From the IMG/VR virus record IMGVR_UViG_3300019776_000324, positions 62,001 to 126,000 of that record: 64,000 bases of DNA; one strand, written 5' to 3'. Under the pieces are notes generated by a model that was not told where the DNA came from, did no database searches, and saw only the letters and a program-made list of their open reading frames with translations. The position numbers and the translations under genes were made by a program. The number at the start of each line of letters is the position of its first letter. The stretch's first letter is position 1. Below are positions 11,431 through 59,469 of the stretch, one piece after another.

Positions 11431-12342
11431 TTGGCCACAACATTTGCACCTAAAGTGGTAGTACCTAAAAACTACCTCAATAACAGAGATATCTTAAAAC
11501 AAATACATCTAAGCAAGAACACATATTGTACCTATTTAGATCCAGTTAACGATCACCAATACGATATTATTTTGCCTACTGTGGAGAAAATTAACCAGCG
11601 CACTATTGCTGAAGCTAGACGCAACAAAGCCGATAGACTCAAACGCGAAGGTGTTATTGTAGATCCTAAAAAGATTGCCAATACCGATTTAGTGTTTCGT
11701 ATTACTTGCTGGGAACACATACCAATGGCGCCTAAAAAAGTGCCAAAAACCACAGCTAAAAAGAAAAAAATTGAAGATATATTTGAGCTAGAACTTGAAG
11801 CAGAAGATCCACTAGCAGAGTTATTGGATATTCCTGTGTTGGATGAAAAGCATGTACGCTTGAACTTTCCTCCGTTTTATCACTATCGTTTAGACGAGAA
11901 TAAAGTGCCATTTTTAGTAGGCAAGAGTCACTGGAAAGGCGACTTAGAGCACGGTGAATTCAGCAAGGATCACGGTCAAACTACACGCACCTTAGCTACC
12001 ATGTACATGAAGCTGTGTGAACGCTATGCTACTCGCAGTAACTGGAGAGGATACACTTACAATGAAGAAATGCGTGGACAAGCTCTACTACAACTTAGCC
12101 AAATTGGTCTCCAGTTTGATGAATCAAAGTCTCAAAACCCATTTGCTTATTACACTGCCGCTATCACTAATAGTTTTACTCGTATTCTTAACTTAGAGAA
12201 AAAGAATCAAAACATTCGTGACGATATGCTAGAGCAAGCTGGATTGAATCCTTCATGGACTAGACAAAATGCCGGCAAGAAAGATCCTAATTTTGGATCT
12301 GTTGTTACTATCACAGCAGGCGAAGACTACGAAGCTCAATGA
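11431..12342 (+). CDS. gp55: Late-transcription sigma factor
   Basis: NYLNNRDIL N-terminus; NWRGYTYNEEM..ALLQL..FDESKSQNPFAYYTAAITNSF gp55 signature; TTG start 8 nt after AGGAG. Confidence 0.9.
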   Translation: MATTFAPKVVVPKNYLNNRDILKQIHLSKNTYCTYLDPVNDHQYDIILPTVEKINQRTIAEARRNKADRLKREGVIVDPKKIANTDLVFRITCWEHIPMAPKKVPKTTAKKKKIEDIFELELEAEDPLAELLDIPVLDEKHVRLNFPPFYHYRLDENKVPFLVGKSHWKGDLEHGEFSKDHGQTTRTLATMYMKLCERYATRSNWRGYTYNEEMRGQALLQLSQIGLQFDESKSQNPFAYYTAAITNSFTRILNLEKKNQNIRDDMLEQAGLNPSWTRQNAGKKDPNFGSVVTITAGEDYEAQ

Positions 12343-13484
12343 GTAAAACAGAAGTGTATTGCACTGCTCCTTGGAACGGATTAACCATCCGCGAAGATGG
12401 GCATGTGCGAACTTGCTGTGTAGGTTCAACCTCGTTGGGTAACTTAAACGAACAAACAATTGAATCTATTGAGTCTGGCCCAGTGCTAGCGGAACTACGG
12501 CAAGCAATGTTAAACTCTGAGCCGCATAGTACAAACTGCCAGGCCTGTATATCACACGAAGCTCATTCAGGGCTTGCATCGCTTCGGCAACACTATCTTC
12601 GTTATTATCCAAATACCGAACAATTAAAATTGCAATTTGTAGACATCAGATGGAATAATATTTGTAACCTGGGCTGTATGTATTGCGATTCAACTTTTAG
12701 TAGCACTTGGGCAACTCGAATGCCTGTTGCACAAAAAAATGTTCCAGTAAAGGTATATCAGGATGAATTGCTAGATTGGATACTTGATCGTTCTGCTGAT
12801 GTCAAGGAAATTATGTTAGTGGGTGGCGAACCCATGTTAATGAAACAAAATTATACTTTGTTGGCCAAATTGCCCTTGGATTCAAAAATTAGTATTATAA
12901 CCAACCTAAGCTACGATTTAGAAAATTTGCCTTGTTTGGATGATCTACTTAAACGGCCCAGAAACAATATCATTTGGAATATCAGTTTAGAAAACACTGA
13001 ACAACAATTTGAGTATGTTAGATCTGGTGCACAATGGTCGCAACTTGAAAAGAATTTAAAATATGTGTCTGACAGATGGCCGGTTACTATCAATGCTGTA
13101 TATTCGGTGTTTAGTGCGTTTACTCTAGTTGATACAGTTAAAGTTGCGCATCGTCTTGGTGTACAAAAGATGAATCTTGTACCTATTAATAAAAACACAT
13201 CTATGGACATGTACAACATGCCATTGGAAATAAAGAAAATAGCACTTGAACAACTGACCGAAGCGCAGGACTGGCATCAGAATCAGTTACACCCCGAGGA
13301 TCGATTTTTATATCCGCTTGTTGGGTTTGATGATTTGAAGAACATGTTGCAGGTTAGTCCAAAAAATCCTGTCACTTGGGCCAAATTCTATGACGGCGTT
13401 GAAAATTACGATAAATGGAGCCAAATTAAATTTCAAAATTTATGGCCAGAAGTATTTGAATTAATGAAAAAGTATTTGAAGTAA
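12339..13484 (+). CDS. Radical SAM enzyme with N-terminal SPASM/twitch-like domain
   Basis: CNLGCMYC (CxxxCxxC), GGEP motif; N-terminal CTAPW..TCC..CQAC. Confidence 0.88.
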   Translation: MSKTEVYCTAPWNGLTIREDGHVRTCCVGSTSLGNLNEQTIESIESGPVLAELRQAMLNSEPHSTNCQACISHEAHSGLASLRQHYLRYYPNTEQLKLQFVDIRWNNICNLGCMYCDSTFSSTWATRMPVAQKNVPVKVYQDELLDWILDRSADVKEIMLVGGEPMLMKQNYTLLAKLPLDSKISIITNLSYDLENLPCLDDLLKRPRNNIIWNISLENTEQQFEYVRSGAQWSQLEKNLKYVSDRWPVTINAVYSVFSAFTLVDTVKVAHRLGVQKMNLVPINKNTSMDMYNMPLEIKKIALEQLTEAQDWHQNQLHPEDRFLYPLVGFDDLKNMLQVSPKNPVTWAKFYDGVENYDKWSQIKFQNLWPEVFELMKKYLK

Positions 13485-13527: not shown

Positions 13528-14544
13528 ATGACAAATCTATTCCGCAAAACGGCCGTATGTACTGATATCCATTTTGGATTGAAATCAAACAGCCTAGTAC
13601 ACAATCAAGACTGTTCGGACTTTATCGACTGGTTTATTGCCACAGCCAAAGAACAAGGCTGTGAAACTGGCATGTTCCTAGGTGATTGGCATCACCATCG
13701 TGCCAGCATTAACTTGCAAACTCTGCACTTCAGTTTAAAAAGTTTACAGAAACTAAGTGCTGCATTTGATAATTTCTATTTTATTCCAGGAAATCATGAC
13801 TTGTACTACAGAGACAAGCGTGACATCCACGGTGCAGAATGGGCACAACACTTGCCTAATATACATGTCATCAATGATTGGTTCAGTGAAGGCGGAGTAA
13901 CTATTGCCCCATGGCTGGTAGGTGACGATCATAAAAAGATACAAAAACTAAACAGTCAGTATGTGTTTGGACACTTTGAACTGCCACACTTTAAAATGAA
14001 CGCCATGGTAGAGATGCCAGATCACGGTGAGATACATGTGGATCACTTTAGTGGTGTAGGCGAAGTATATTCTGGACACTTCCATTTACGACAAAACAAA
14101 CGCAACATCAACTATATTGGCAACTGCTTTCCGCATAACTTTGCTGACGCAGGTGACAGTAGTCGCGGCATGATGGTCCTAGAGTGGGGCAAGCCAGCAG
14201 AATATCACGCATGGCCAGGACAACCCTTGTATCGTGTGCTTAAACTGAGTCAGGTGATTGACAATGCTCCAAACATGTTGGCCAAGAATATGCATGTCAG
14301 AGTAGAACTAGACATTGATATCAGTTACGAAGAAGCTAACTTTATCAAAGAAACATTTGTTAAAGACTACAACTTAAGAGAAATGGCCTTGCTACCAGTT
14401 AAGAGCACCGCAGTCGATTTGGATCTCGCTCCGGGCGAAATCAAGTTTGAAAGCGTAGATCAAATTGTTACAGACCAAATTACTAATATCGAAAGTGAGT
14501 TTTACGATCCTAAGCTACTGTTAAAAATATATCAAAATCTATAA
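13528..14544 (+). CDS. gp47: Recombination endonuclease subunit (Mre11/SbcD-like)
   Basis: DIHFG, GDWHH, GNHD, GHFE, SGHFH metallophosphoesterase motifs. Confidence 0.95.
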   Translation: MTNLFRKTAVCTDIHFGLKSNSLVHNQDCSDFIDWFIATAKEQGCETGMFLGDWHHHRASINLQTLHFSLKSLQKLSAAFDNFYFIPGNHDLYYRDKRDIHGAEWAQHLPNIHVINDWFSEGGVTIAPWLVGDDHKKIQKLNSQYVFGHFELPHFKMNAMVEMPDHGEIHVDHFSGVGEVYSGHFHLRQNKRNINYIGNCFPHNFADAGDSSRGMMVLEWGKPAEYHAWPGQPLYRVLKLSQVIDNAPNMLAKNMHVRVELDIDISYEEANFIKETFVKDYNLREMALLPVKSTAVDLDLAPGEIKFESVDQIVTDQITNIESEFYDPKLLLKIYQNL

Positions 14545-16118
14545 TGATAGAAGATATCCTGTCAGACTTACAACAAAGATATGATTGCTCTAGTCCTATC
14601 TATTTGTCTGATTTTTTTCAGCCAGGCGGTGATCAACGACTTTACAATAAGTTAAAGGGATTGTATCAGCCGGCGTACGATAATCGATATCGAATAATAG
14701 TCGTACAAGATTGTGCTGACATACATGATTACAAGGATTTGCCTGGAAGAGCTATTGTTGCTCTTCAAAAATATGCCAGCCAAATTGATATTTCTAATTT
14801 TTTTATTTTGTTACTAACCAGTAACAATATGGAATCTGAATTGGAAACAGCCAGAACTCTGTATTCATCTGATGAGTGTGCTATACGCACAGAATTGATT
14901 GATAATTTACCCTTGGTGGAGTTGCCTACAGATGCACAAGATACATTCTGTGTGCTTCCGTGGATGCACTTGTATATTGGGCCCGATGGTAATATTTTAC
15001 CATGCTGTGTTGCTGATCAAAAATTTCCAATTGGCAACATAAAGGATCAGTCTATCACCGATATAGTGACTTCTGATAAATTTAATCGCATTAGATCTAA
15101 TATGATCCAGGGCTTGCGCAGTAAAGAATGCTCGTATTGTTATGACCAAGAAGATTCTAAAATAACAAGCCTGCGCTCACAGCATAATAAAAAATATCCT
15201 TCTATTTCTGCCAAGTCAGTCAAGCATGACGGAACCATTGATCAATTTGAGCCAATTGATCTTGACATACGATTGAACAACATTTGTAATCTTAAATGTC
15301 GCATGTGTAGTGGATATTTTAGTAGTGCTATTGCACAAGAAGAAGCAGAATTGTTCGGCAATACTGATTCTGTTAATGCTTCTTTACGATTACAACAAAG
15401 AAAATCCAAATTTTCTGAAATAGTAGAGTATCTGCCGTCTACTGAAAAAATTTACTTTGCCGGGGGCGAGCCCTTGCTAGCCAGTGAACACTACGAAATT
15501 CTAAAATATCTAATTGACTGCGGTAATACTGATTTGGAAATTGCTTACAATACCAATTTTACTACATTACAATATCGCGATATTAGTGTGCTAGATTTAT
15601 GGAAACACTTTTCCAATGTTACTGTTGGTGCTAGCCTTGATGCCTGTGGCCCGGTTGCTGAGTATGTACGACACGGTACTAATTGGGCAACTATAGAATC
15701 AAATTTAAAATTATTAAAAACTCAATGCCCAACTGTAAATTTTAGAGTAGCATCAACTATAGGATTATTAAATGTCCAAAGTCTGATTGAGTTACAACAA
15801 ACCTGGCACACTAATCAACTGCTTGATATTTCAAAATTTTCAATGACTACCATGATCGAACCTGCGCACTTGACAGTTCGAGTTTTACCCACGCATCATA
15901 AACAACGGCTGGAGGCACTAATTACTGCTCATATCAAATGGTGCCAGAGTAATTCTGCCATTAGTCTTGCAAATCAATGGCAAGACCTGTTAAACTACAT
16001 GTGGTCCGAAGATCACAGTCACTATTTAGATGACTTTAAACGATTGACCATATCACTAGATGCTCATAGAAAAGAGTCTCTGTTGATTGCAGTACCCGAA
16101 CTTAGCGACTTATTATGA
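14544..16118 (+). CDS. Radical SAM enzyme with twitch/SPASM domain and an extra ~130-aa N-terminal domain
   Basis: FCVLPW..PCC..CSYC, then CNLKCRMC, AGGEP, YNTN. Confidence 0.88.
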   Translation: MIEDILSDLQQRYDCSSPIYLSDFFQPGGDQRLYNKLKGLYQPAYDNRYRIIVVQDCADIHDYKDLPGRAIVALQKYASQIDISNFFILLLTSNNMESELETARTLYSSDECAIRTELIDNLPLVELPTDAQDTFCVLPWMHLYIGPDGNILPCCVADQKFPIGNIKDQSITDIVTSDKFNRIRSNMIQGLRSKECSYCYDQEDSKITSLRSQHNKKYPSISAKSVKHDGTIDQFEPIDLDIRLNNICNLKCRMCSGYFSSAIAQEEAELFGNTDSVNASLRLQQRKSKFSEIVEYLPSTEKIYFAGGEPLLASEHYEILKYLIDCGNTDLEIAYNTNFTTLQYRDISVLDLWKHFSNVTVGASLDACGPVAEYVRHGTNWATIESNLKLLKTQCPTVNFRVASTIGLLNVQSLIELQQTWHTNQLLDISKFSMTTMIEPAHLTVRVLPTHHKQRLEALITAHIKWCQSNSAISLANQWQDLLNYMWSEDHSHYLDDFKRLTISLDAHRKESLLIAVPELSDLL

Positions 16119-17878
16119 TACAAATTAAAAATTTAACTGTTCGTAACTTTATGAGTGTAGGTAACGCTACACAAGCTGTGGACTTTGATCGTAACGATCT
16201 TACACTGGTACTAGGCGAGAACTTGGACTTAGGCGGTGACGGAAGTCGTAACGGAACAGGTAAAACTACAATTATCAATGCTCTTAGTTACGCCTTGTAC
16301 GGACAAGCATTAAGTAATATTCGCAAAGACAATCTAGTTAACAAGACCAACGGCAAAGGCATGTTGGTAAGTTTGGATTTTGTTGTTGGCAATCAAGAAT
16401 ATAAGATTGAGCGTGGTCGCAAGCCCAATGTACTTAGGTTCTATGTCAACAACAAAGAACAAGAAATTACAGATGATGCACAAGGCGATTCAAGAGAAAC
16501 ACAAGAAGCTATTGAACATACCCTAGGGCTTAGTCATGACATGTTCAAGCATATCCTAGCACTCAATACTTACACAGAACCGTTTTTAAGTTTAAAAGCC
16601 AACGATCAGCGTACAATTATTGAGCAGTTGTTAGGTATTACCATGCTGTCAGAACGGGCAGACAAGATCAAAGAGCTTAATAAATCTACTAAAGATGGAA
16701 TAACACAAGAAGAGTTTCGTATTCGTGCTGTGCAAGAAGCTAACAAGCGCATTGAAGAACAAATTACGGCACTCAAGCGTAGACAAACAATGTGGACCGA
16801 CAAGCATGAGCAAGATATCAAGGAACTTGAGAAGGCCTTATCGTCGTTACAGAATATACAGATTGAAGACGAGATTAGAGCGCACAAAGATCATAAGGAA
16901 TGGGATCAAAAGCGCAAGGACATCAATGAACTTTCGTCGCAGATCAGCAGAACGAAACTGGACATCAGCCGGGAGGAAAAGCTGGTTGCCAAACTATCTA
17001 AAGAACTCGAGACGCTTTCAAAACACGAATGTCATACATGCGGTCAGTCCTTTCACGACAGTAAGCACCAACAAGTTTTGGAAGCGAAACAGAAGGATCT
17101 GGCAGTGGCAAGAGAAAACTGCCAAGCTCATAGCACCCTGTTATCAGAACTACAGGTTGCCCACGACTCCCTGGGCCCGTTAGGAAAACCTCCTACCATG
17201 TTCTACGACAAAGAAGAAGATGCAATACATCATCAGGCTACTTTAACCAACTTAGAAAAACAAATTGCTGAAAAATCCACAGAGGTAGACCCTTATGGAG
17301 AGCAAATTGAAGAAATGCAACAGCAAGCCCTACAGGAGGTAACATATGACACACTTAATGAACTTACTCGCTTACAAGAACATCAAGAGTTCTTGCTCAA
17401 ACTACTCACAAGCAAAGACTCGTTTATCCGTAAAAAAATTATTGAACAAAATCTTAGCTATCTAAATGCTAGACTAACACACTACTTAGATCGTGTGGGC
17501 TTGCCGCATACTGTGGTATTCCAAAACGATCTGACTGTCAGCATCGAAGAGCTAGGTCGTGAGCTGGACTTTGATAACTTATCTAGAGGTGAACGCAATC
17601 GTTTGATCTTGAGTATGAGCTGGGCATTCCGTGATGTGTTTGAAAGCCTGTATCAGCCTATTAACTTGTTGTTTATAGATGAAATGATTGACAACGGATT
17701 GGATACACAAGGTGTTGAAAGCAGTCTAGCATTACTAAAACAAATGAGCCGTGAACGACACAAGAGTATTTGGCTAGTAAGTCACAGAGATGAACTTGCT
17801 GGTCGTGTAGAGAACATACTCAAAGTTGTTAAGGAAAACGGCTTTACAAGTTACAACACGGATGTAGAAATAGCGTGA
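16115..17878 (+). CDS. gp46: Recombination ATPase subunit (Rad50/SbcC-like)
   Basis: Walker A NGTGKTT, CHTC zinc hook in coiled coil, LSRGE signature, FIDE Walker B, VSH. Confidence 0.95.
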   Translation: MIQIKNLTVRNFMSVGNATQAVDFDRNDLTLVLGENLDLGGDGSRNGTGKTTIINALSYALYGQALSNIRKDNLVNKTNGKGMLVSLDFVVGNQEYKIERGRKPNVLRFYVNNKEQEITDDAQGDSRETQEAIEHTLGLSHDMFKHILALNTYTEPFLSLKANDQRTIIEQLLGITMLSERADKIKELNKSTKDGITQEEFRIRAVQEANKRIEEQITALKRRQTMWTDKHEQDIKELEKALSSLQNIQIEDEIRAHKDHKEWDQKRKDINELSSQISRTKLDISREEKLVAKLSKELETLSKHECHTCGQSFHDSKHQQVLEAKQKDLAVARENCQAHSTLLSELQVAHDSLGPLGKPPTMFYDKEEDAIHHQATLTNLEKQIAEKSTEVDPYGEQIEEMQQQALQEVTYDTLNELTRLQEHQEFLLKLLTSKDSFIRKKIIEQNLSYLNARLTHYLDRVGLPHTVVFQNDLTVSIEELGRELDFDNLSRGERNRLILSMSWAFRDVFESLYQPINLLFIDEMIDNGLDTQGVESSLALLKQMSRERHKSIWLVSHRDELAGRVENILKVVKENGFTSYNTDVEIA

Positions 17879-18888
17879 CATTAGCAACCTGGCACTTCCA
17901 TATTGAGATATCAAGCAAGTGTACCTTGCGTTGTCCTCGGTGCGCACGACAAGAAGTGCCAGACAGTTTGATCAATACCGAATTAGATTTAGAGTTTTTC
18001 AAACGCAACTTTACTGAAAAATTTATTTTGGATAATGTTGAGAAGATCACATTCTGCGGCGATGACGGTGATCCTATCTATGCACACGATCTTATTCCTG
18101 TAATTGATTATATCAAACGCATTAAGCCTGTACAAATTGTTATTATTACCAACGGTTCACACAAAAAGCCAGAATGGTGGCGTGGACTTGGTAGTGTATT
18201 AACTTCTCAAGATACTGTACATTTTAGTATAGATGGCTGGGATAACGAATCCAACAATCTGTATAGGGTCAACAGTGATTTTAACAGCATACTCGAAGGT
18301 GTAGCCAATCTGCGTTCAACTAGTAGTTGCAGAACAGTTTGGGCTGCTATTGCATTCAAGTTTAACGAAGATCATATCACCAACATAGTATCTATGGCGC
18401 AAAGCTACGGGTTTGATGCTGTACAGTTTACAAAGAGTACTAAGTTTGGTAGTGTATATCCAAGTTATGGCAACGATGATCCGCTTGAACCTAGTAGAAA
18501 GTTTGTTAGCAGCTCGCATAGATTTGAAAGAGATGTTATACTGTTAAGCTCGCGTGGGTTACATCCATCTGTAGATGTAAAGAATATTGAACTGTATAAA
18601 TCAGTTAAAGAAGTAAATGGCGTTAAACCGCTATGTGAGATTGGAAACAAAGGACTGTATATTGATGCTCGCGGTAGATTGTTTCCGTGTTGCTGGGTAG
18701 CTAATCGTTACGCACACAATACAGAATGGCAACAGCTTGCTAATCAATTTGACCTCAATCAAAGAACATTAACAGATGTATTAGTAGATCCGTTTTGGAC
18801 AACAGAATTTAAAACATTTAAGTGGCAAGAGTGTCAAAACAAGTGTAATGCCAAGAAAGTGGACGAAAAATATGCAACTCAGTGGTGA
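17875..18888 (+). CDS. Radical SAM enzyme with C-terminal SPASM-like Cys cluster
   Basis: CTLRCPRC, GDDGDP, ITNG; C-terminal C..FPCCW..CQNKC. Confidence 0.88.
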   Translation: MTLATWHFHIEISSKCTLRCPRCARQEVPDSLINTELDLEFFKRNFTEKFILDNVEKITFCGDDGDPIYAHDLIPVIDYIKRIKPVQIVIITNGSHKKPEWWRGLGSVLTSQDTVHFSIDGWDNESNNLYRVNSDFNSILEGVANLRSTSSCRTVWAAIAFKFNEDHITNIVSMAQSYGFDAVQFTKSTKFGSVYPSYGNDDPLEPSRKFVSSSHRFERDVILLSSRGLHPSVDVKNIELYKSVKEVNGVKPLCEIGNKGLYIDARGRLFPCCWVANRYAHNTEWQQLANQFDLNQRTLTDVLVDPFWTTEFKTFKWQECQNKCNAKKVDEKYATQW

Positions 18889-19335: not shown

Positions 19336-19777
19336 ATAGGCAGCTTTACTGACTCTGTGGTAAGTGTATATGGCTTACCCCCATCGAAGAACGGTGTGAT
19401 ACCCGGTCTGGAAAACTTTGGGCGTCAAAGGCAATTGCTAACTTAAGGCAACAAATGGTTTGAGCTCTGTAGAAAAAGATACAACTCATGCTTATAGGAC
19501 TTGGATTTATTATCGGGTCACTAGGGTTCCGTTGATTTGTGAAGCTAGAGTAAGGGGTACCGGTCAACCGCCTCTGCGTAGGAAACTACAATCTCTTTAT
19601 AATAAATGACTGCTGTCACTCGGATAATGTGAAAAGAAGTCAATTCACCGTGGCACGGTGAATTGTGACCACATAATCTGGATAATGCTAAAGAAAAGCA
19701 ATTATGTTCTAATTAAAACATTATGTCTGAGCTTTAGCGAAAGACATAGATTAGCGTAGCTAATCTTTCAATGACAC
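19336..19777 (+). ncRNA. Putative large structured RNA (or structured ssDNA/origin element) directly after the GIY-YIG gene
   Basis: Longest non-coding gap in the window; more than 10 helices found by eye, including a GAAA-tetraloop hairpin (19578-19589), a perfect long-range 9-bp pair (19505-19513/19599-19607) and a 12-bp inverted repeat (19641-19665). Strand inferred from the GNRA loop and G-U pairs. Confidence 0.6.
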
Positions 19778-20114: not shown

Positions 20115-20546
20115 TTATATAGGTCCTAAGAGTTCAAAGCCCGTGATGCCTTGTTTGTATAAGTGTGCTTGATCTAAGTACAAATACTTAAATCCTCTTT
20201 CACGGTAGATAGCACATTCGGTTTTTAAACTTTCTATGCCCAGTCTCAGCTTGGGCTTTTTATAGTTCCAAGCAAACTGAGCACACAAAGCATTCTCATT
20301 GTCGTATCGTTTAATAAGACTAAACGCTACAAGTAAATCATTGTCGTAATAGCCAATTACATCAGTGTCAGGGTCTGTGTACTGACTGTCAAAGATTGGC
20401 ATAACACTGGCAAAGTGTTTGTAGATACAGTAGGTTCTGTAGATATCATTGAGTACAGCAATATCTGGATCTTTGATGTACGCCCAAGCTACACTGACTT
20501 GATCAGTATTCTTGGCAAGATCTATTCTGGCAAATTGATAAGTCAT
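20115..20546 (-). CDS. Aminoacyl-tRNA:protein transferase C-terminal-like (ATE_C/Bpt) GNAT-fold protein
   Basis: YYDNDLLVAFS..FAWNY..PKLRLG..SL..E....RERGFKYLYL....YK....FELL parallels the Bpt/ATE1 C-terminus (LVAV..YDPD..SLG..IE.AR..G..Y.YLG..YK..F...E.L). Confidence 0.65.
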   Translation of the reverse strand: MTYQFARIDLAKNTDQVSVAWAYIKDPDIAVLNDIYRTYCIYKHFASVMPIFDSQYTDPDTDVIGYYDNDLLVAFSLIKRYDNENALCAQFAWNYKKPKLRLGIESLKTECAIYRERGFKYLYLDQAHLYKQGITGFELLGPI

Positions 20547-21049
20547 TTGCGTGGATCCTGTCTGTGCTGAAATAGTGCCTCAAGATACTCTTCTGGCCAT
20601 GTATCGTAAAAGCCTTTGTCTGCCATGATCTTGGCCTTGGCATTCAAGTCACTAAGACTTTGTACCAGAGCCAATGCATAAGTGCCTTGATTCATTGAAA
20701 CACCGTTGACAATCTCAGGATCGCCGGGATGATCTTCTAAGGCTAATATATCATTGCGTAGTAACCACGATCCATTGGCTAACTTTAGTTTGTAGCTGAA
20801 TTCGTTATAATCAAACTCTTTAGGGTCGTAGGCTAAAACAACAACGCTTTTGCCACCCAGTCCGTGAACAGCAATATCTACCAAGTCGTAATATGGATCT
20901 CGGCCAATGCGAACTTCAAAATCTTTTTCTAGTCTAGCCTTGCGAGCATACGGACAAGGAGGCCAGCCACCTAGGGCAGGATTCTTGACTTCTACAAAGT
21001 CTACAATCCATTTTTCTATATCAGTTTGTACAGTTGCTAGGTCTAACAT
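20543..21049 (-). CDS. DUF1415-like protein
   Basis: W..DFV...N.....PCPYARKA and DHP motifs as recalled for DUF1415. Confidence 0.55.
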   Translation of the reverse strand: MLDLATVQTDIEKWIVDFVEVKNPALGGWPPCPYARKARLEKDFEVRIGRDPYYDLVDIAVHGLGGKSVVVLAYDPKEFDYNEFSYKLKLANGSWLLRNDILALEDHPGDPEIVNGVSMNQGTYALALVQSLSDLNAKAKIMADKGFYDTWPEEYLEALFQHRQDPRK

Positions 21050-21225
21050 TAGAAGAAGGGTAATCCGGTTTTCTTGGTTGTTTCTAAATTTTCTTTGATT
21101 AGTTCACTGATACCAGTGCGTTCGCTGACACTGAGTTGTAGTGCTTGGTCGTAGCTAACACCACCTCTCATGTACCACGCAATTTTAATAGCCTCTTGCC
21201 TTATACTAACAGTTTCCTCGTCCAT
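21049..21225 (-). CDS. gp51: Baseplate hub assembly / tail chaperone (gp51-like); probably also made as the -1 frameshift extension of gp26
   Basis: WYMRGGVSYDQALQLSVSER..I.ELI motif; the frame stays open upstream through the slippery site at 21285-21279. Confidence 0.75.
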   Translation of the reverse strand: MDEETVSIRQEAIKIAWYMRGGVSYDQALQLSVSERTGISELIKENLETTKKTGLPFF

Positions 21226-21263
21226 CTTGTCAACTATGTTAGCAATCTGGTCAGAGTCCAAGA

Positions 21264-22097
21264 CTAAGAGGCGGGTCCGAAAAAACTGGACATGTCCAAG
21301 GTAATGATCTGCTCGTATTCGTGCTGGCAAGCAGGACACTGAATCTTAAGCGGTTGCATTTCACTTTGTTCACGCAGTTTGATAACATGATCTCTAATTT
21401 GGTCAAACAGTTTGCGGTCGCAATTTTTTAAGAAGTCGTTAATATATTCAAATTCACTAACCAACGCCTGCGGAGTTTTGATAGCACTAATGCTTAATGC
21501 TAAGGATTGTACAGTAATATCGGTTAATTTTTTAAATGCCGCAGTTAACGCAGTCATTTTGTCAGCTTCGGAAACTGTAGCATCAGGAATAACTTGTAAC
21601 AGTTTTTGTTGCTCAAACTGTAGCTGATTGTTATCGTTCAAGTGTTTGTAGTTCAGTGGACGGAAATAAATTTCTAAATCACCATGACGAACACTGGCGC
21701 TATAATCAGCACCTCTTAGGGTGTCTAGCACTGATCTAAGATCTAACTTGCGCTCACTGGTATCGCTACATTTTGGACAATTACTCATAAACTCCATGTC
21801 ATGCCCGTAACTAGCAATTCTAATAGCTATTAAAATAGTATCTAAATCGATACTAGGAACTACCCAAGCATCTCTGATTGCAGGAACACAGCTTTGGATT
21901 ACATTAACTGTGGCTTGCCCATTAAACAGTGCGTCTGGAGTTCTATAAGTAATCTCATCAATTGCAGTCATTGGGTAAACTGGAAGTTCGCCGTTTGCAG
22001 GCATAGCTAATGTACCGTTAGGGTAATTTTGGCCCTGACTGGGTAATTTGATGTAGATGCTGGGTTGTCTAAAGTACTGACTTAAAGGATTGGTCAT
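21264..22097 (-). CDS. gp26: Baseplate hub assembly chaperone (gp26-like)
   Basis: NPL..YFRQP.IYIKLPS.G, PMTAIDEI, IAIRIASYG, CPKC and CPAC Zn motifs, C-terminal SSFF. Confidence 0.85.
   Translation of the reverse strand: MTNPLSQYFRQPSIYIKLPSQGQNYPNGTLAMPANGELPVYPMTAIDEITYRTPDALFNGQATVNVIQSCVPAIRDAWVVPSIDLDTILIAIRIASYGHDMEFMSNCPKCSDTSERKLDLRSVLDTLRGADYSASVRHGDLEIYFRPLNYKHLNDNNQLQFEQQKLLQVIPDATVSEADKMTALTAAFKKLTDITVQSLALSISAIKTPQALVSEFEYINDFLKNCDRKLFDQIRDHVIKLREQSEMQPLKIQCPACQHEYEQIITLDMSSFFGPAS
21279..21285 (-). other. -1 ribosomal frameshift slippery heptamer U UUU UUC
   Basis: Minus strand AGT TTT TTC GGA CCC GCC TCT TAG, in phase with gp26; the -1 frame reads FFRTRLLVLDSDQ... into the gp51-like ORF. 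Confidence 0.7.
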
Positions 22098-22139: not shown

Positions 22140-24197
22140 ATGGATGAAAATGATTTAAAAGCTGTTTCGGAGGCAATGAACGAACTCAGAGAATCTGGGA
22201 CTCTCAGCGCCGATACTCTGAACAAATTAAGCGATTCGACAAAAAAATCATCTGAAGCACAGAAAAAATTTGCAAACGATCTAGCCCAATATGGTCGCCA
22301 AGTGTCGGGTGCCCTGTCTGGTCTAGCATCTGGTGGTGGATCATTTAAAAGTTTAGCTGGTGCCATTGATGTTACTGCTACTGCAATTTCTAAAGTAGCT
22401 GGTCAATTTGGAATAGTTGGCAAAATTCTTGGAGGTCTTGCTACCGGTCTTGGGGAAGCTGCTAAAGTTGCATTAAACACATTAGACGATGTTTCTAAGA
22501 ACTATGAAGCATTAGGTGATGCTAGTGCCGGAGCAGCAGACGGCATTGATGGATTGTACCGACAATTTAACCAGCTGGGCAATTACAGCTTACCTGCATT
22601 TACTAAAGCAGTTAAAGGAAATACACTAGGCCTGGCCGCACTTCAAGGAACAGCTGCACAAGGTGCAGAGGAATTAAGTAAAGTTTCTGGAGTTCTAACA
22701 ACAGGAAACATGGCTGGCAGATTCCTTAAGTTAGGAATAAGTTTAGATTCAGTCGGCGACGCTACAACTGAATACTTGGCAACTAGCGCACGATACGGAA
22801 TACTTCAAGGTGCAACCACAGAGGAATTAACTAAAAAAACTCAAAACTATATTGAAGAAGTAGATAAGATTGCTCGATTAACCGGCCAAACTCGTGAAGC
22901 ACAGGCCAAAGAAGCTCAAAAAAGTTTAGTTGATGCTCGTTTCCGTGCCAAGCTGGCAGACATGCAATCCAGTGGCCAAGGAGCAGCAGCCGAGGAATTA
23001 AGAAAATATGTTGAAGGCCTAGGTGGTGCCGCTGGAGACGCGGCTCGTGCATTGGTTACAGGCATTCCGTTAACTAAAGAAGCCGCGGCAGCTAACTTGT
23101 TTGCTAACGATGCTATTAGACAAAATACATTAGCTGTACAAGAAGGTAGAAAAGCAACAGAAGCAATTGTAAACACTCAGGATGCGTTAAGAGATGGTAC
23201 TGTTAGATTTGGTAAACAAATCATGTATGCTGGAGACCAGTTTGGTGGTATAGCTGTACAAGCATACGATACCAGAGCTATTCTTGAGTCTGAAGGAAAG
23301 ACTCGCGAAGAACGATTATCTGATGTAGAGCAAGCGCAAAATAAACAAGCAACGGCATCAGGAAAGTTAACAGAAAATATTACAGACGCTCAATTAGCTG
23401 CTGCTAACACCAGTAAAAATTTACAAAGTCTGTCATTTAGTTTTGCATCACTAGCAAGTGGCCCAATAAAATCATTTGCAGAGCAGTTAGAAAAAGCCAC
23501 CGGTGTTATAAACAAGATTGCTGGAGTAGGCGGTACTGCAACAACCCCGTCAGGAGTAAATCGTGGCCTGCCTGGTGGCGCTGCAATAAGTGGTAATAAA
23601 TCAGTTACCATTGGCGATCAAGTACGAAGCGGCGGTGACAGAAACTGGCGTAACAACAATCCTGGAAACATTGAATACGGACCATTTGCACAGAGTATGG
23701 GTGCCATTGGTAGCGATGGCAGATTTGCTATATTCCCTACTGAAGAAATGGGTCGCAAGGCCGCTGACACTTTACTAAAAGGCAAAGCCTACGCTAACTT
23801 ATCAGCAGCTCAAGCAATTAATAAATGGGCTCCATCTAACGAAAACGATCCAAAGGCCTACGCAGCAAGCATAGCCAAACAAACCGGCTTAGACATGAGC
23901 AAGCGTTATAGTGATATGTCGCCTGCAGAACAATCTAAATTCTTAGATGCAATGAACAAAGTTGAAGGCGGCCGTGCTGGTACAATTAGTGGACCAAATG
24001 GCGGATACAAGTCAGCTGACATTCCAACTGCATCATCAGCTGGAGCCGAAACAACAGCAAAGAGTAACTCAGCTGCACCTGCACAACAGGCCAGCGACGA
24101 GTTCAAAACTCAAACTCAATTGTTAAAAGAACAAAACGATCTGCTACGACAAAACAATGCGCAGAACGCTAAATTAATACAGCAAGGCAAGGCGTAA
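22140..24197 (+). CDS. Tape-measure / baseplate hub (gp29-like) protein with C-terminal lysozyme-like domain
   Basis: Ala/Gly/Leu/Gln-rich helical 685 aa; RNNNPGNI..F.T.E.G..A..I.KWAP..END..Y motif of virion muralytic domains; next to gp26/gp51. Confidence 0.7.
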   Translation: MDENDLKAVSEAMNELRESGTLSADTLNKLSDSTKKSSEAQKKFANDLAQYGRQVSGALSGLASGGGSFKSLAGAIDVTATAISKVAGQFGIVGKILGGLATGLGEAAKVALNTLDDVSKNYEALGDASAGAADGIDGLYRQFNQLGNYSLPAFTKAVKGNTLGLAALQGTAAQGAEELSKVSGVLTTGNMAGRFLKLGISLDSVGDATTEYLATSARYGILQGATTEELTKKTQNYIEEVDKIARLTGQTREAQAKEAQKSLVDARFRAKLADMQSSGQGAAAEELRKYVEGLGGAAGDAARALVTGIPLTKEAAAANLFANDAIRQNTLAVQEGRKATEAIVNTQDALRDGTVRFGKQIMYAGDQFGGIAVQAYDTRAILESEGKTREERLSDVEQAQNKQATASGKLTENITDAQLAAANTSKNLQSLSFSFASLASGPIKSFAEQLEKATGVINKIAGVGGTATTPSGVNRGLPGGAAISGNKSVTIGDQVRSGGDRNWRNNNPGNIEYGPFAQSMGAIGSDGRFAIFPTEEMGRKAADTLLKGKAYANLSAAQAINKWAPSNENDPKAYAASIAKQTGLDMSKRYSDMSPAEQSKFLDAMNKVEGGRAGTISGPNGGYKSADIPTASSAGAETTAKSNSAAPAQQASDEFKTQTQLLKEQNDLLRQNNAQNAKLIQQGKA

Positions 24198-37069: not shown

Positions 37070-40000
37070 ATGGCCGTAACAAGAATTAATAATAACCAGA
37101 TAACTGATGCATCAGCAGGAAATGCCTATGTTGGTGTAAATGCTGCGGTAAAATTACAGAATTATACAATTACTTCTCAGAAAATTGCAAATAATTTAAA
37201 CTATGGGTCCGATTTAACAATTGCAGGAAATTTAACAGTTAACGGTACAACCACAACAGTTGATACAGTTAATGTGCTAGTTAAAGATCCATTAATTACA
37301 TTAGCTGATGGCCAAACATCTGGCACACCAACACTTGATATCGGTACTATCGGCCTCCGCGGTAGTCAACTATCAGCAGTTATGGCTTGGAAAGAAAGCC
37401 AATTAGAATTCGTTACAGCACTCAGTAACACAACTGTTTCAAACACAACATTTAATATTAGTAGCTACGCCAATCTCCATACTGGTAACTTTATTGTGCA
37501 AGGCACAACCAGTTTAGTTGGAAACATGATTGGAGCAGTTAATGCCACAGGAACAATCACAGGTGGAAACCTAGCTACCCCTGGTACAGTAAGTTCTGGT
37601 GGCAACATCACAGGCGGCAATTTATTAACAGGTGGACTAGTAAGTTCAACTGGTACAATCACTGGTGGCAATTTGGCCACAGGTGGCACTGTAAGTGCTA
37701 CAGGTAACATTACCACTGCTGGATTCTTTGTTGGAACTTTTGCTGGTAGTATCAGTGGCAACGTTACAGCAGCAGGTGCAAATACTCAAGTACAATACAA
37801 CAACAGCGGCAACTTGGCTGCTTCGTCTGCATTTACTTTCAATTCAGCAACCAATGTATTAAGTTTAACAGGCAATGTCCAAGGTGGAAACTTATTAACA
37901 GGTGGACTAGTAAGTTCAACTGGCACAATCACTGGTGGCAATTTGGCCACAGGTGGAACAGCAAGTGCAACAGGAACAATCACTGGTGGCAATTTGGCCA
38001 CAGGTGGAACAGCAAGTGCAACAGGAAATATCACCGGCGGCAACTTGTTAACAGGTGGATTAATATCAGCAACTAGCAATGTTACTTCGGCAGCAAATAT
38101 ATCAGGTGGAAACTTATTAACAGGTGGACTAGTAAGTTCAACTGGCACAATCACTGGTGGCAATTTGGCCACTGGCGGCACAATTAGTTCCACTGGTAAC
38201 ATTACAGGTGGTAACATTTCAGCAACAAACCACACAGGTACAGCAGTTAGCGTAACAGGTGGCGTAACAGCCGCAAGTGTTAGTGGTGGTGTTATTACTG
38301 GAACAAGTACAAGTGTCACTGGCACACAAACTGCCGCTTCAACAGTAGGTGGCGTAATTACTGGAACAAGTACAAGTGTCACTGGCACACAAACTGCCGC
38401 TTCAACAGTTGGTGGAGTAATTACCGGCTCAAGCACAAGTGTTAGTGGTACACAAACTGCTGCAAGTACAGTAGGTGGAGTAATTACTGGATCAAGTTCT
38501 AGTGTTACTGGAAATGTCACTGGTGGCAATGTTAATACAGCAGGCAACATTAGTGCTACAGCTAATATTACAGCTAGTTATTATTTTGGTAACGGTAGTC
38601 AATTAACTGGCGTTACAGCTAGTACTTCTGGTTTCCCGGTCACAGCTGGCACTTCAAATATTGCCGCTGCAACCAACGGCAGCATTGGTATTACTGTAGC
38701 TGGAACAAGTAATGTATTAACCGTTGCTAGTACAGGAACAGTTACAACTGGCACAGCAAGCGTCACTGGTAATATTACGGGTGGTAATATTTCAGCAACA
38801 AATCATACAGGTACCAATGTAAGTGTAACTGGTACACAGACTGCTGCAAGTACAGTAGGTGGTGTAATTACTGGTTCAAGTGTATCAGTAACAGGAAATA
38901 TCACCGGCGGCAACTTAAATTCTGCACAAGTGTACAATGCCACTGCAATGACTATTACTACTAGTGCTGGTAACATTAATCTTAGCCCAGCAGGTAATCT
39001 TGTACTAAACAGCGATTACATTAATAATGTGTTGGATCCAGTTCAACCACAAGATGTGGCAACCAAGGCCTATGTTGACAACTTTGCTACAACCGGCATC
39101 GCGTTCCACACACCAGTTGTTGCTGCTACAACAACCACATTGGCTTCGGCCACGGGTGGTACAATTACTTACACTCAACCCAACGGTGTAGCCAACGGTA
39201 TTGGTGCGTTGTTAACAACAACCGGATCATTTAACTTAATTGATACTGCCAATGTGCAAACAGTTGGCACTCGTATTCTTGTTAAGAACGAAGGCAATGC
39301 TGTGTTCAACGGTATATACACCTGGGCCAATGCTACAAACATTGTTCGTTCAACAGATGCTGACACCTATGGTCCAGACAGTACAACAGACTTGAGTGTA
39401 AACGATTACTTCTTTGTATCCAGCGGTAATGTCAACAGTGGTAGTGCGTATATTGTAAATGCTCCTACAGGCACAATCACATTTGGTACAAGCAACATTA
39501 CATTTGCTCAGTTTAGTCAAGCTCAAACTTACACAGCCAATACACAAGCTGGTTTAAGTTTAACAGGTACTGTATTCAGTGCCAAGATAGATAACAACAC
39601 TACAGCATTTGACGGTAACGGTAATATTATTGTTAAAGCTGGCGCAAATTTAACCACACCTAACATTGGTGCAGCCACTGGTACTAGTCTTAGTGTTACA
39701 GGTACAGTAACAGCTGCTAGTACAGTAGGTGGTGTAATTACAGGTTCAAGTTCTAGTGTTACTGGAAATATAACTGGTGGTAATATTGCTACTGGTGGAA
39801 CAATTAGCGCAACTGGCAACATCACTTCTTCTGGTAATGTTTCAGCTGCTACCCATATTGGTACCGCAGTTAGTGTCACTGGTGGTGTAACAGCCTCATC
39901 AGTTGCAGGCGGTGTTATTACAGGAACAAGTACAAGCGTTACCGGTTCACAAACAGCCGCTAGTACTGTGGGTGGTGTAATCACTGGTAGTTCTGTTTCA

Positions 40001-46300: not shown

Positions 46301-46771
46301 AACACTGGTGCCAACGCAACAGGTAATATTGGTAGCGCAACACTATATTTTAATACGGCATTTATCAAAGCAACATCAGCACAGTACGCTGACTTGGCCG
46401 AGATGTATACCGCTGATGATAACTATGTTCCGGGTACTGTAGTTGAGTTTGGTGGCGATCAAGAAGTTACAATTAGTAGTTCAAATCATTGCACACAAGT
46501 AGCTGGTATTATTTCAACTAATCCAAGTTACTTGATGAACAGCGCACAAGAAGGTGAACATGTGTTGCCAGTTGCGCTAACTGGTCGAGTTCCTTGTCAA
46601 GTAGTTGGAACTATACGCAAAGGTGATCGATTAGTGTCAAGCGATTTACCTGGTGTTGCTATGGCATTAGATATGAAACACTACGAGCCGGGCTGTATCA
46701 TTGGCAAAGCATTGGAAAATTACAATTCTATTGCCACTGGAGTAATTGAAGTAGCAGTCGGACGATTCTAA
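43337..46771 (+). CDS. Second tail fibre (1144 aa), same repeat family, with C-terminal chaperone
   Basis: DGVSLSLNDRILVTGQS.A.QNGIY head domain; 21-aa repeats; AQYADLAEMY..ALTGRVPC..KGD..IGKALE. Confidence 0.85.
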   Translation: MALTRPRAAQIYDIDYKQATRVVTISNITLAGSAPSSVDGVSLSLNDRILVTGQSTASQNGIYYVTTVGTGSNGTWARSQDTNSTGELLGGTIVMVTEGTVYADTQWKLTTNDPITIGSTALTFVQNYSANSISAGTSNVSVTSNANVTISSAGTPNVLTVSSTGVVVSGTASATGNITGNYFFGNGSQLTGIAPSSTYSNSNVSAFLATFGSNTISTTGTVTAGNITGGNLLTSGLISATGNISTAAQLVSTVATGTAPFVISSTTKVSGLNVEQVDGFDASQSAVANTIVVRDAGGNINTAVLSASGNVTGGNIVATTALTNGNITITGANIVSTGTTIYIDPNGTGGTDGNVIITGNLSVTGNATYINSNNITTNDLTINMANNAATAAAANGGGIEVGPVGAPYVTLTYNSTSNIWVASNGLNVQGILSASGNITGGNISATNHTGTNVSVTGTVTAASTVGGVITGSSSSVTGTQTAASTVGGVITGTSTSVSGAVTAGSIATSGTISTTGNIYTGNILTNGYYYANGVAFTGSGGGGGTPGGANTYIQFNDGGAFNGTAGLTFDKTTNAVVATGNVTGGNIIASNDVYAGPGATTAGFTTAPVFVGRDTAGTYVQSALQNASGNGSADFTAYANNGTEAAGWVDIGFTGNTFNDGNYTVTGANDGYLISQGNASFGGNLVIATGAIGTTKDIVFATGGFLTGNIKARLFNSTGQFSVTGNINGGNLTTTGKLLAGTANITPASQGFGTGLNVTSGDITVFRGDASGAIYVGNSQATYIYYDGTSWSIAGGTGVAVSNLTTTGTVSATGNITGGNLRTAGQVSATGNITSAANIAGANANITTQINTTSVSASGNIRTAGTISATSSVTAASTVGGVITGSSVSVTGAQTAASTVGGVITGSSVSVTGAQTAASTVGGVITGTSVSVSGSVTGGAHNGTSVSVSGGVTAASVSGGVITGTSVSVSGNVTAGGHVGTVYTNSIINTGANATGNIGSATLYFNTAFIKATSAQYADLAEMYTADDNYVPGTVVEFGGDQEVTISSSNHCTQVAGIISTNPSYLMNSAQEGEHVLPVALTGRVPCQVVGTIRKGDRLVSSDLPGVAMALDMKHYEPGCIIGKALENYNSIATGVIEVAVGRF

Positions 46772-59463: not shown

Positions 59464-59469
59464 TTGACA

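What the first reader, a model, noticed from the sequence alone, without database searches (positions are those of the whole stretch)
21049..22097. Lambda G/GT-style programmed -1 frameshift fusing T4 gp26-like and gp51-like proteins
Seen: gp26 ends ...AGT TTT TTC GGA CCC GCC TCT TAG. The in-phase heptamer T TTT TTC (21285-21279) fits X XXY YYZ and lies four sense codons before the stop. The -1 frame is open (FFRTRLLVLDSDQIANIVDKMDEE...) into the gp51-like domain, whose own ATG has no convincing SD. The locus abuts the tape-measure-like gene. Known: tail assembly chaperones of many long-tailed phages are made as G/GT pairs by frameshifting, whereas T4 gp26 and gp51 are treated as separate genes. 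Inference: this lineage makes a ~350-aa gp26-gp51 fusion, supporting equivalence of gp26/gp51 with G/T chaperones.
Basis: partly seen in the sequence, partly recalled or inferred. Interest (0 to 1): 0.7.

Follow-up and report, generated by a model that had tools for sequence, protein, structure and literature searches.

The report
Frameshifted tail chaperone gene, jumbo phage
A T4-related giant phage makes a short and a long version of its tail/baseplate-hub assembly chaperone from one gene by slipping back one base on a run of six T's, doing with one gene what phage T4 does with two (gp26 and gp51); the signal is real and very widely conserved, but the principle was published for T4-like phages in 2022.

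Summary
The minus-strand gene 21264-22097 (277 aa, Pfam PF12322, the T4 gp26/gp51 family) ends AGT TTT TTC GGA CCC GCC TCT TAG. It carries an in-phase T_TTT_TTC at 21285-21279, and the -1 frame stays open for 78 codons to 21049.

The heptamer, its phase and the -1 extension recur in all 37 complete related IMG/VR junctions and in 9 named jumbo phages. They also recur in 97 of 97 cyanophage-like and other T4-like junctions and in 3 named T4-like phages. Codon periodicity switches to the -1 frame exactly at the heptamer.

About 20 divergent lineages encode body plus extension as one ORF with no T run, so the long protein exists in nature. The extension is homologous to the C-terminal domain of T4 gp51 (hhalign E 1.2e-5; controls 0.04 or worse). 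T4 gp26 and gp51 are themselves paralogs.

The short product is therefore gp26-like and the long product (about 349 aa) gp51-like, which is the G/GT logic. Ribosomal slippage versus RNA-polymerase slippage is not resolved.

Vladimirov, Gautam and Davidson (Virology 2022) already described this for T4-like phages, so the window is a new member of a known kind.

The parts
21264..22097 (-). 0-frame ORF, 277 aa: the short chaperone form (TAC-N; gp26-type architecture) with two CxxC zinc-ribbon-like motifs. It ends ..LDMSSFFGPAS*.
   Evidence: PF12322 T4_baseplate E 1.5e-16 and phrog_150 baseplate hub. AF2 model has pLDDT 84 and pTM 0.78. Foldseek finds BFVD 'baseplate hub assembly protein' models at E 1e-24 and TM 0.90. 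It is the only PF12322 gene in the 344-kb genome.
21279..21285 (-). Slippery heptamer T_TTT_TTC in X_XXY_YYZ phase (0-frame codons AGT TTT TTC).
   Evidence: Sequence. Invariant in 37/37 complete window-clade junctions, 9/9 named jumbo phages, 97/97 other T4-like IMG/VR loci and 3 named T4-like phages. Entropy is zero at three consecutive wobble positions.
21049..21285 (-). -1 frame extension: 78 codons plus TAA, FFRTRLL...WYMRGG...TTKKTGLPFF. It is the C-terminal domain of the long form (TAC-NC; gp51-type architecture).
   Evidence: -1 frame purifying selection starts at the first codon after the heptamer. An HMM finds 406 relatives, about 20 of them C-terminal parts of 319-351-aa single ORFs. 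hhalign against the gp51 C-terminus gives E 1.2e-5, versus 0.038 or worse in controls. AF2 predicts a helical fold, pLDDT 82.
21266..21272 (-). 5' arm (GCCUCUU) of a candidate long-range stem that starts 6 nt after the heptamer.
   Evidence: RNAalifold consensus on 30 sequences; 95% of cells paired; one covarying pair, UA 14 / CG 9 / UG 1 / CA 5. The evidence is weak and specific to this clade.
21191..21197 (-). 3' arm (AAGAGGC) of the candidate long-range stem.
   Evidence: Both arms also encode conserved residues (R-L and Q-E-A), so the conservation is confounded.
22140..24197 (+). Divergently transcribed 685-aa protein. Probably the tape measure protein with a C-terminal cell-wall-lytic domain, i.e. 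the presumed client of the chaperone.
   Evidence: phrog_873 endolysin-like at residues 500-665. Atlas feature look-alikes include PF10145 tape-measure clusters at 0.93. It is the divergent neighbour in 18/18 window-clade loci that reach it. No detectable similarity to T4 gp29.
20543..21049 (-). Downstream 168-aa gene whose ATG overlaps the TAA of the -1 extension (TAATG).
   Evidence: Sequence; phrog_28122, function unknown. The stop/start overlap is with the -1 frame, not the 0 frame.

Best explanation
The gene at 21264-22097 encodes the tail/hub assembly chaperone of a T4-superfamily jumbo phage and is decoded in two ways. Most ribosomes terminate at TAG (21266-21264) and release a 277-aa short form with the architecture of T4 gp26. 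A fraction of ribosomes slip back one base while tRNA-Phe sits on UUU (P site) and UUC (A site) of U_UUU_UUC. They continue in the -1 frame for 76 more codons and release a ~349-aa long form. Its extra helical domain is homologous to the C-terminal domain of T4 gp51. The two nested proteins correspond to lambda gpG/gpGT (TAC-N/TAC-NC): the shared body is expected to hold the tape measure protein during hub and tube initiation, and the extra domain to recruit another tail component. What is shown here: the heptamer, its phase, selection on the -1 frame from the heptamer onward, natural single-ORF versions of the long protein, and homology of the extension to the gp51 C-terminus. What is inferred: that the shift is ribosomal, its efficiency, the binding partners, and any stimulatory RNA element.
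For: Sequence and ORFs come; family assignment.

Conservation:
- The heptamer, its phase and the -1 ORF are conserved in 37/37 window-clade loci at 56-81% protein identity.
- The same holds in Atu_ph07, Phosso, Xoo-sp13, PA5oct, Serratia BF, Munch, XacN1, CBB and EJP2 at about 28-34% identity.
- It also holds in S-WAM1, OLIVR5 and LPCS28 and in 97/97 further IMG/VR T4-like junctions.
- The codon before the run always ends in T although it encodes S, N, T, H, A, G or D.

Selection on the -1 frame:
- The most variable codon position moves from 0-frame position 3 (entropy 1.37) to -1-frame position 3 (1.25) at the first codon after the heptamer. The same switch occurs in the cyanophage-like set.
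- The stop codon varies (TAG/TGA/TAA) while the overlapping -1 Leu is kept.
- No start codon is conserved in the first 20 codons of the extension, although R3, R5, L6, L7 and I14 are invariant.

The long protein exists elsewhere:
- About 20 cluster representatives are single ORFs of body plus extension. Their junction DNA has no T run (AGT AGT TTC AGA..; AAT CTC TTT CGT..).
- T4 gp51 is PF12322 plus a C-terminal domain, and T4 gp26 is PF12322 only.
- The extension aligns to the gp51 C-terminus at E 1.2e-5, versus 0.31 (reversed) and 0.038 or worse (40 column shuffles).
- The genome has only one such gene.

Literature.
Against: There is no direct evidence of the long protein or of ribosomal slippage in this phage, and no RNA run holds the window. 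No convincing stimulatory structure was found. The only consensus element is a 7-bp long-range stem with a single covarying pair in the window clade. Nothing is conserved in the cyanophage-like clade, and there is no conserved upstream SD-like element. An in-phase T_TTT_TTC can occur without a -1 ORF: the paralog g1 in L058 ends AAT TTT TTC ACT.. with immediate -1 stops. So the heptamer partly reflects the conserved F-F motif. The title of Vladimirov et al. [quoted passage not shown] The gene is not in the canonical TAC position: it is divergent from the tape-measure-like gene, and the tube gene lies 38 kb away. The complex prediction of extension with tube protein gave no answer.
Confidence: 0.68

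Rival explanations
1. Transcriptional slippage. RNA polymerase adds one extra U on the T6 run, so that a subset of mRNAs carries the body and the extension in one frame. The protein products are identical to those of -1 ribosomal frameshifting.
For: A homopolymeric T run is the conserved element. No conserved downstream RNA structure or upstream SD-like stimulator was found across clades. Xoo-sp13 and XacN1 have T7. The title of Vladimirov et al. [quoted passage not shown] PMC10885494 explains that phrase as separate short and long genes.
Against: The run is only 6 T in more than 140 sequences and is never lengthened. To my knowledge, efficient bacterial RNA polymerase slippage needs about 8-9 or more A/T (established knowledge, not tested here). 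The run is always in exact X_XXY_YYZ phase, although that is confounded by the conserved F-F residues.
Confidence: 0.22
2. The downstream frame is a separate small gene (the 'mini-gp51' annotated in many genomes), translated by its own initiation or by termination-reinitiation. No fusion protein is made.
For: Annotators-75-aa ORFs here, for example OLIVR5 gp159c 'baseplate hub assembly catalyst' and Serratia BF gp247. The Met at extension position 21 is about 90% conserved in the window clade. Atu_ph07 and Phosso have an ATG overlapping the 0-frame TGA (ATGA). Sullivan et al. 2010 treat cyanophage gp51 as a short protein.
Against: Protein-level conservation and -1 codon periodicity start at the heptamer, 20 codons upstream of that Met. 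The Met is missing in L026 and Phosso. There is no SD sequence before it. Called ORF starts differ from genome to genome. Single-ORF homologs join body and extension exactly at this point, as T4 gp51 does.
Confidence: 0.06
3. Sequencing or assembly error in a homopolymer, or a decaying gene: the true gene is a single 349-aa ORF, or the extension is dead.
For: Homopolymer runs are error-prone, and single-ORF relatives exist.
Against: The same T6 and the same frame arrangement occur in about 150 independent contigs and isolate genomes from many studies. The extension is under purifying selection.
Confidence: 0.01

Closest known systems
Tail assembly chaperones of T4-like phages (TAC-N/TAC-NC), Vladimirov, Gautam & Davidson, Virology 2022; 566:9-15. 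Known to me only through citing text in PMC10885494 and PMC12846349.
   Same: It concerns the same protein family and the same logic. A short and a long form share the N-terminal body. Citing text reports poly-T slippery sequences at the 3' end of TAC-N genes in T4-like phages. Some T4-like phages instead carry one short gene and one long fused gene, which matches T4 gp26 and gp51 as analysed here.
   Different: The window is an uncultured 344-kb freshwater jumbo phage, in the half of the family tree that also holds Atu_ph07, PA5oct, the Rak2-like enterobacterial jumbo phages and XacN1. I could not check whether that paper covered this half. The extension here is longer (78 aa versus about 50-65 aa). 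The gene sits divergent to the tape-measure-like gene.
Lambda gpG/gpGT and the conserved -1 frameshift of tail assembly genes (Levin 1993; Xu, Hendrix & Duda 2004; from established knowledge)
   Same: There are two nested products from a -1 shift on an X_XXY_YYZ heptamer a few codons before the 0-frame stop. The gene is associated with the tape measure gene.
   Different: There is no sequence or fold similarity to lambda G/T or to Pfam TAC families. The body is much larger (277 aa versus about 140 aa) and has zinc-ribbon motifs. The gene is not between the tube and tape-measure genes. The heptamer is U_UUU_UUC rather than G_GGA_AAG.
T4 gp26 and gp51 (baseplate hub assembly chaperone / catalyst)
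   Same: All belong to PF12322. The 0-frame product ends with the same F-F motif as gp26 (..KEFFELL*). The long product has the gp51 architecture, including F-[RK]-x-x-L-[LI]..P-[DE]-E-I and the ..ER..L[IV]E motifs.
   Different: T4 uses two divergently transcribed paralogous genes and has no slippery run (FF = TTC TTT). In the tree, gp26 and gp51 are sisters nested among single-gene, heptamer-bearing lineages.
Cyanophage / vibriophage 'mini-gp51' (Sullivan et al. 2010, PMC3037559)
   Same: It is the same -1 extension, annotated as a stand-alone ORF that lacks the first ~200 aa of gp51. In 97/97 such loci it lies in the -1 frame behind an in-phase T_TTT_TTC at the end of the gp26-type gene.
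   Different: That paper did not link it to recoding. The extension in the window clade is too diverged to be recognised by Pfam or PHROGs.

Membership tests
Pfam PF12322 T4_baseplate (gp26/gp51 family) | Significant match to the family HMM above the gathering score | tested here: met
   61.2 bits against a cut-off of 24.5, E 1.5e-16. T4 gp26 (E 8.8e-64) and T4 gp51 (E 3.9e-52) both match the same model.
T4 gp51-type architecture (PF12322 body + C-terminal domain) | A C-terminal domain homologous to gp51 residues ~195-249 directly follows the body | tested here: met
   This holds for the -1 product only. Extension profile (37 sequences) versus gp51 C-terminus profile (23 sequences): E 1.2e-5, probability 81%. 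Reversed control 0.31; best of 40 column shuffles 0.038. The full-length alignment of single-ORF relatives to gp51 runs through the extension. The extension has no hit in the local Pfam or PHROGs copies.
G/GT-type tail assembly chaperone recoding (TAC-N/TAC-NC) | [quoted passage not shown] | tested here: met
   Met at the sequence level. The protein products were not observed.
G/GT-type tail assembly chaperone recoding (TAC-N/TAC-NC) | Gene lies immediately upstream of, and co-oriented with, the tape measure gene, downstream of the tube gene | tested here: not met
   The gene is adjacent to the tape-measure-like gene but divergent from it. Sheath and tube genes are at 56149-60159, 34-38 kb away. 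T4 gene 26 is likewise divergent from the 51-27-28-29 operon.
G/GT-type tail assembly chaperone recoding (TAC-N/TAC-NC) | Body binds the tape measure protein; extra domain binds the tube or another tail protein | tested here: inconclusive
   The complex prediction of extension plus tube protein returned 'no answer'. Body plus tape measure was not tried.
G/GT-type tail assembly chaperone recoding (TAC-N/TAC-NC) | Sequence or fold similarity to characterised TACs (lambda gpG, Pfam TAC families, solved TAC structures) | tested here: not met
   No Pfam TAC family matches. There are no PDB sequence hits, and Foldseek against PDB gives no match with E <= 0.001.
Transcriptional slippage sites | Long homopolymeric A/T run (about 8-9 or more in bacteria, from established knowledge) and heterogeneous transcripts | tested here: inconclusive
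   The run is T6 (T7 in two phages). Transcripts could not be examined because no RNA run holds the window.
-1 PRF with a stimulatory element | A stable hairpin or pseudoknot 5-9 nt downstream, or an SD-like element upstream, supported by covariation | tested here: inconclusive
   The only candidate is a 7-bp long-range stem (21272-21266 with 21197-21191) with one covarying pair. Nothing is shared across clades.

The most novel reading that the evidence does not exclude
A single recoded gene is the ancestral state of the gp26/gp51 chaperone across the whole T4 superfamily, jumbo phages included. It has been replaced at least twice independently by gene duplication and subfunctionalisation. One replacement gave T4's gp26 plus gp51, which are sisters nested among heptamer-bearing single genes. 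The other occurred in a jumbo-phage lineage with a tandem short paralog (g1) followed by a long single-ORF paralog (g2). The 'mini-gp51' ORFs annotated in hundreds of cyanophage and jumbo-phage genomes would then be mis-annotated -1 extensions. I could not read Vladimirov et al. 2022. If that paper did not cover the jumbo half, or did not show independent duplications, this part would be new. The clade-specific long-range stem would also be a new stimulator if it is real.
Probability: 0.3. Interest if true: 0.45.

Novelty: new member of a known kind. Interest (0 to 1): 0.33.

Why it matters
The finding corrects the annotation of this genome and of many others. The small 'hypothetical' or 'gp51-like' ORF after the baseplate-hub gene is the -1 extension of that gene. 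The gene itself is a tail assembly chaperone rather than a structural hub subunit.

It also gives a clean natural comparison of two solutions to one problem. Making a short and a long chaperone at a set ratio is achieved by recoding in most of the T4 superfamily and by duplicated genes in T4 itself. The jumbo-phage lineages offer a testable system for U_UUU_UUC slippage that appears to work with little or no RNA stimulator.

Tried and rejected
- Pfam, PHROGs and NCBIfam on the 78-aa extension gave no hit. BLASTP of the extension against T4 gp51 gave nothing significant (E 1.2; no hit). Only profile-profile comparison with diverse alignments showed the relation.
- hhalign of the shallow window-clade alignments (A2, A3) against single T4 sequences or T4 families was uninformative.
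- PDB sequence and fold searches for the body found nothing.
- Local hairpins downstream of the heptamer: single-sequence folds were not better than shuffles (z = +1.8 to -2.2). Hairpins seen by eye in Atu_ph07 and Phosso start about 20 nt downstream, too far for a classical stimulator.
- RNA evidence: the look-up of sequencing runs returned only DNA metagenomes with 17% or less of the sampled words. Older RNA runs are kept only as contigs, which drop rare variants, so they could not have settled transcriptional slippage anyway.
- Complex prediction of extension plus tail tube gave no answer.
- tblastn of the tape-measure-like protein against the neighbours in named jumbo phages and against T4 gp29 found no similarity.
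- The primary paper (PubMed 34826709) is not held.
- I did not build or fold the fused 349-aa sequence, because the tools take only unaltered sequences.
Full report
WHAT IS THERE

On the minus strand, ORF 21264-22097 encodes a 277-aa protein. Its 3' end reads ...ACC TTG GAC ATG TCC AGT TTT TTC GGA CCC GCC TCT TAG. The heptamer T TTT TTC occupies 21285-21279 in X_XXY_YYZ phase, four sense codons before the TAG at 21266-21264.

The -1 frame is open from the heptamer for 78 codons (FFRTRLLVLDSDQIANIVDKMDEETVSIRQEAIKIAWYMRGGVSYDQALQLSVSERTGISELIKENLETTKKTGLPFF) and ends at TAA 21051-21049. That TAA overlaps the ATG of the next gene (TAATG; ORF 20543-21049).

The 277-aa protein matches Pfam PF12322 'T4_baseplate' (E 1.5e-16) and phrog_150 'baseplate hub'. 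The extension matches nothing in Pfam, PHROGs or NCBIfam.

The window is bases 62001-126000 of a 344,244-bp viral genome with direct terminal repeats. It carries a T4-type portal, prohead protease, major capsid protein, sheath, tube, gp5-like hub/lysozyme and late sigma factor. Its gp26-family protein finds jumbo phages such as Atu_ph07, Phosso, PA5oct and the Rak2-like enterobacterial phages at 28-34% identity.

IS IT MORE THAN CHANCE?

I collected junctions from relatives.

- Window clade. Forty IMG/VR loci have 56-81% protein identity. All 37 with a complete junction have NNT TTT TTC in the same phase, four codons, a stop that varies among TAG/TGA/TAA, and a 78-codon -1 ORF ending ..TTKK[ST]GLPFF.
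- Named jumbo phages. Nine of them (Atu_ph07, Phosso, Xoo-sp13, PA5oct, Serratia BF, Munch, XacN1, CBB, EJP2) have the in-phase T_TTT_TTC, or T_TTT_TTT in the two Xanthomonas phages. They have 1-14 further 0-frame codons and a 75-81-codon -1 ORF beginning FF[RQY]...
- Periodicity. In 30 unique window-clade sequences the most variable codon position is 0-frame position 3 upstream of the heptamer (mean entropy 1.37 versus 0.76 and 0.44). From the very first codon after the heptamer it becomes -1-frame position 3 (1.25 versus 0.33 and 0.59). The three wobble positions inside NNT TTT TTC never vary.
- Chance expectation. Given the residues x-F-F, codon usage elsewhere in these genes predicts NNT TTT TTC with probability about 0.09 per independent lineage.

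The first 20 residues of the extension are conserved (R3, R5, L6, L7 and I14 are invariant). They contain no conserved start codon, and the Met at position 21 is absent in some members.

THE LONG PROTEIN EXISTS ELSEWHERE AS ONE ORF

An HMM of the extension was searched against 1.84 billion representative proteins and found 406 relatives. Most are 40-100-aa ORFs with ragged N-termini, as expected if gene callers pick arbitrary starts. About 20 are proteins of 319-351 aa with the extension at their C-terminus.

Their sequences run ...C-x-x-C...LDLDxSxxF-R-x-K-L-I..EE-I...W[YF]MRG.... The DNA at two such junctions has no T run (AGT AGT TTC AGA TCA; AAT CTC TTT CGT GCT). They are therefore genuine in-frame genes, not homopolymer errors.

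In those two loci a second PF12322 paralog lies immediately upstream. It lacks both the Cys motifs and the extension. These phages thus carry one short and one long gene. The window genome has a single PF12322 gene. Its body is about equally similar to both paralogs (E 2e-39 and 4e-34), whereas the paralogs are far from each other (1e-10).

RELATION TO T4

In T4, gene 26 is followed by gene 25 (TAATG overlap), and gene 51 is transcribed divergently. So gp51 is not 'downstream of gp26' there.

T4 gp26 ends ..KEFFELL* with FF encoded TTC TTT, which gives no slippery run and no -1 ORF. T4 gp51 also matches PF12322 (E 3.9e-52, residues 1-201) and then has about 50 further residues. In the precomputed annotations its relatives carry a second family, PF28602, which my Pfam copy did not report for T4 gp51.

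Profile-profile comparison gave these results:

- Single-ORF long proteins versus the gp51 family aligned end to end, extension included (E 5.4e-5).
- Extension-only profile (37 diverse sequences) versus gp51 C-terminus-only profile (23 sequences): E 1.2e-5, probability 81%.
- Controls: reversed template 0.31; best of 40 column shuffles 0.038.

Motifs shared by eye are F-[RK]-x-x-L-[LI]-x-x-[PS]-[DE]-E-I and ..ER..L-[IV]-E.

The 0-frame product therefore has the gp26 architecture and the -1 product (273 + 76 = 349 aa) has the gp51 architecture.

HOW WIDE IS IT?

The cyanophage S-WAM1, Agrobacterium phage OLIVR5 and the straboviridae member Cronobacter phage LPCS28 all end their gp26-type gene with in-phase T_TTT_TTC. 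A 59-67-codon -1 ORF follows that is plainly gp51-C-terminus-like (..YYKTNFALMQHHKYSLSELEDMMPWERDVYVNLL..). In OLIVR5 a 46-aa piece of it is annotated 'baseplate hub assembly catalyst'.

In two further IMG/VR scans, 97 of 97 complete junctions had the heptamer in phase. The preceding codon was TCT, AGT, AAT, GCT, GGT or GAT, and the same periodicity switch was seen. This explains the observation of Sullivan et al. 2010 that cyanophage and vibriophage 'gp51' lacks the first ~200 residues (PMC3037559).

A maximum-likelihood tree of 58 bodies was built. I left out most near-duplicates and used every third row of the gp26 and gp51 alignments. It splits into a jumbo half and a T4-like half (100/99). 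T4 gp26 and gp51 are sisters (99/94), nested among heptamer-bearing single genes. The short and long paralogs of the two-gene jumbo lineage fall in the other half. If the root lies outside the gp26+gp51 clade, the single recoded gene is ancestral and duplication replaced recoding at least twice. The deep branches are long (OLIVR5 was flagged), so this is suggestive only.

MECHANISM

U_UUU_UUC allows tandem re-pairing of two tRNA-Phe in the -1 frame, and the product would read ..S-F-F-R-T-R-L-L...

I looked for stimulators. RNAalifold finds only a long-range 7-bp stem: GCCUCUU, starting 6 nt after the heptamer (21272-21266), pairs with AAGAGGC (21197-21191). It is 95% paired in 29 distinct sequences and has one covarying pair (UA 14, CG 9, UG 1, CA 5). 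It beats shuffles and slid controls, but both arms also encode conserved residues. Nothing comparable is conserved in the cyanophage-like clade, and there is no conserved upstream SD-like element.

Insertion of one U by RNA polymerase on the T run would give the same protein. The run length (6) argues against efficient slippage on general knowledge, but I could not test it. No RNA run holds the window.

I put ribosomal -1 frameshifting at about two thirds, transcriptional slippage at about one fifth, and a separately initiated small protein at about one in twenty.

FUNCTION

The T4 tail review lists gp26 and gp51 as hub assembly chaperones that are not needed in the finished particle (PMC3004832).

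The neighbouring, divergently transcribed 685-aa protein has a lytic-enzyme-like C-terminal part (phrog_873). Its feature-based look-alikes include tape measure clusters. It is the neighbour in 18/18 window-clade loci that reach it. No sequence similarity to T4 gp29 was detectable.

The body model is confident (pLDDT 84). It has no solved relative, but it matches many predicted 'baseplate hub assembly' proteins. The extension is predicted as a helical domain. A predicted complex of extension with tube protein gave no answer. The G/GT-like division of labour is therefore inferred from architecture and literature, not shown.

WHAT IS KNOWN

[quoted passage not shown] - PMC12846349 says that poly-T sequences are known -1 signals in 'TAC-N genes of T4-like phages'.

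I could not read the paper itself. My other searches found no paper describing the frameshift for gp26/gp51, for cyanophages or for jumbo phages.

The principle is thus published. The window adds a member from an abundant freshwater jumbo-phage lineage: more than 7,700 protein clusters matched at E <= 1e-5.

VERDICT

This is a new member of a known kind, of modest interest.

Noticed in passing
L058:411-1295 (and L059:51-1040): In the two-gene jumbo lineage the upstream short paralog ends AAT TTT TTC ACT GAT AAC AAA TAA. This is an in-phase T_TTT_TTC, but the -1 frame stops almost at once. It may be a relic of the ancestral slippery site or simply the F-F motif in an AT-rich genome. Either way, it shows that the heptamer alone is not diagnostic.
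   Followed up: partly
window 12339-13484, 14544-16118, 17875-18888: Three radical-SAM-domain proteins (phrog_14086, phrog_21308) are interleaved with SbcD-like (13528-14544) and SbcC-like (16115-17878) nuclease subunits. They lie just upstream of the chaperone locus, which is an unusual cluster for a structural region.
   Followed up: no
window 20115-20546 (-): A 143-aa ORF has a weak Pfam hit to the arginine-tRNA-protein transferase C-terminal domain (PF04377, E 0.011). This is a GNAT-like fold, and no PHROG matches.
   Followed up: no
window 37070-43261 and 43337-46771 (+): Two very large proteins (2063 and 1144 aa) share a C-terminal module (phrog_22593) and have tail-fibre-like parts. They are probably fibres or whiskers like those of Rak2/CBB-type jumbo phages.
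   Followed up: no
window 60168-61379 (+): A 403-aa protein directly after the tube gene has two separate tube-protein-like segments (phrog_13438 at residues 54-155, phrog_4542 at residues 202-256). It may be a duplicated tube or tube-initiator protein.
   Followed up: no
L001:3001-3013 and L002:3001-3013: In Atu_ph07 and Phosso the 0-frame stop overlaps a -1 frame ATG (..TTC GCA TGA / ..TTC GAA TGA, i.e. ATGA). In these two phages termination-reinitiation could add to, or replace, slippage.
   Followed up: partly
window 19336-19777: A gap of about 440 bp has no ORF of 130 aa or more on either strand. No tRNA was found anywhere in the window. The gap was not scanned for other RNA families.
   Followed up: partly
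(gp51 relatives P0271-P0362): Precomputed annotations list a Pfam family PF28602 on T4-type gp51 proteins that my hmmscan copy of Pfam did not report for T4 gp51. It probably models the gp51 C-terminal domain. Scanning the jumbo-phage extensions against it would be a quick independent test.
   Followed up: no
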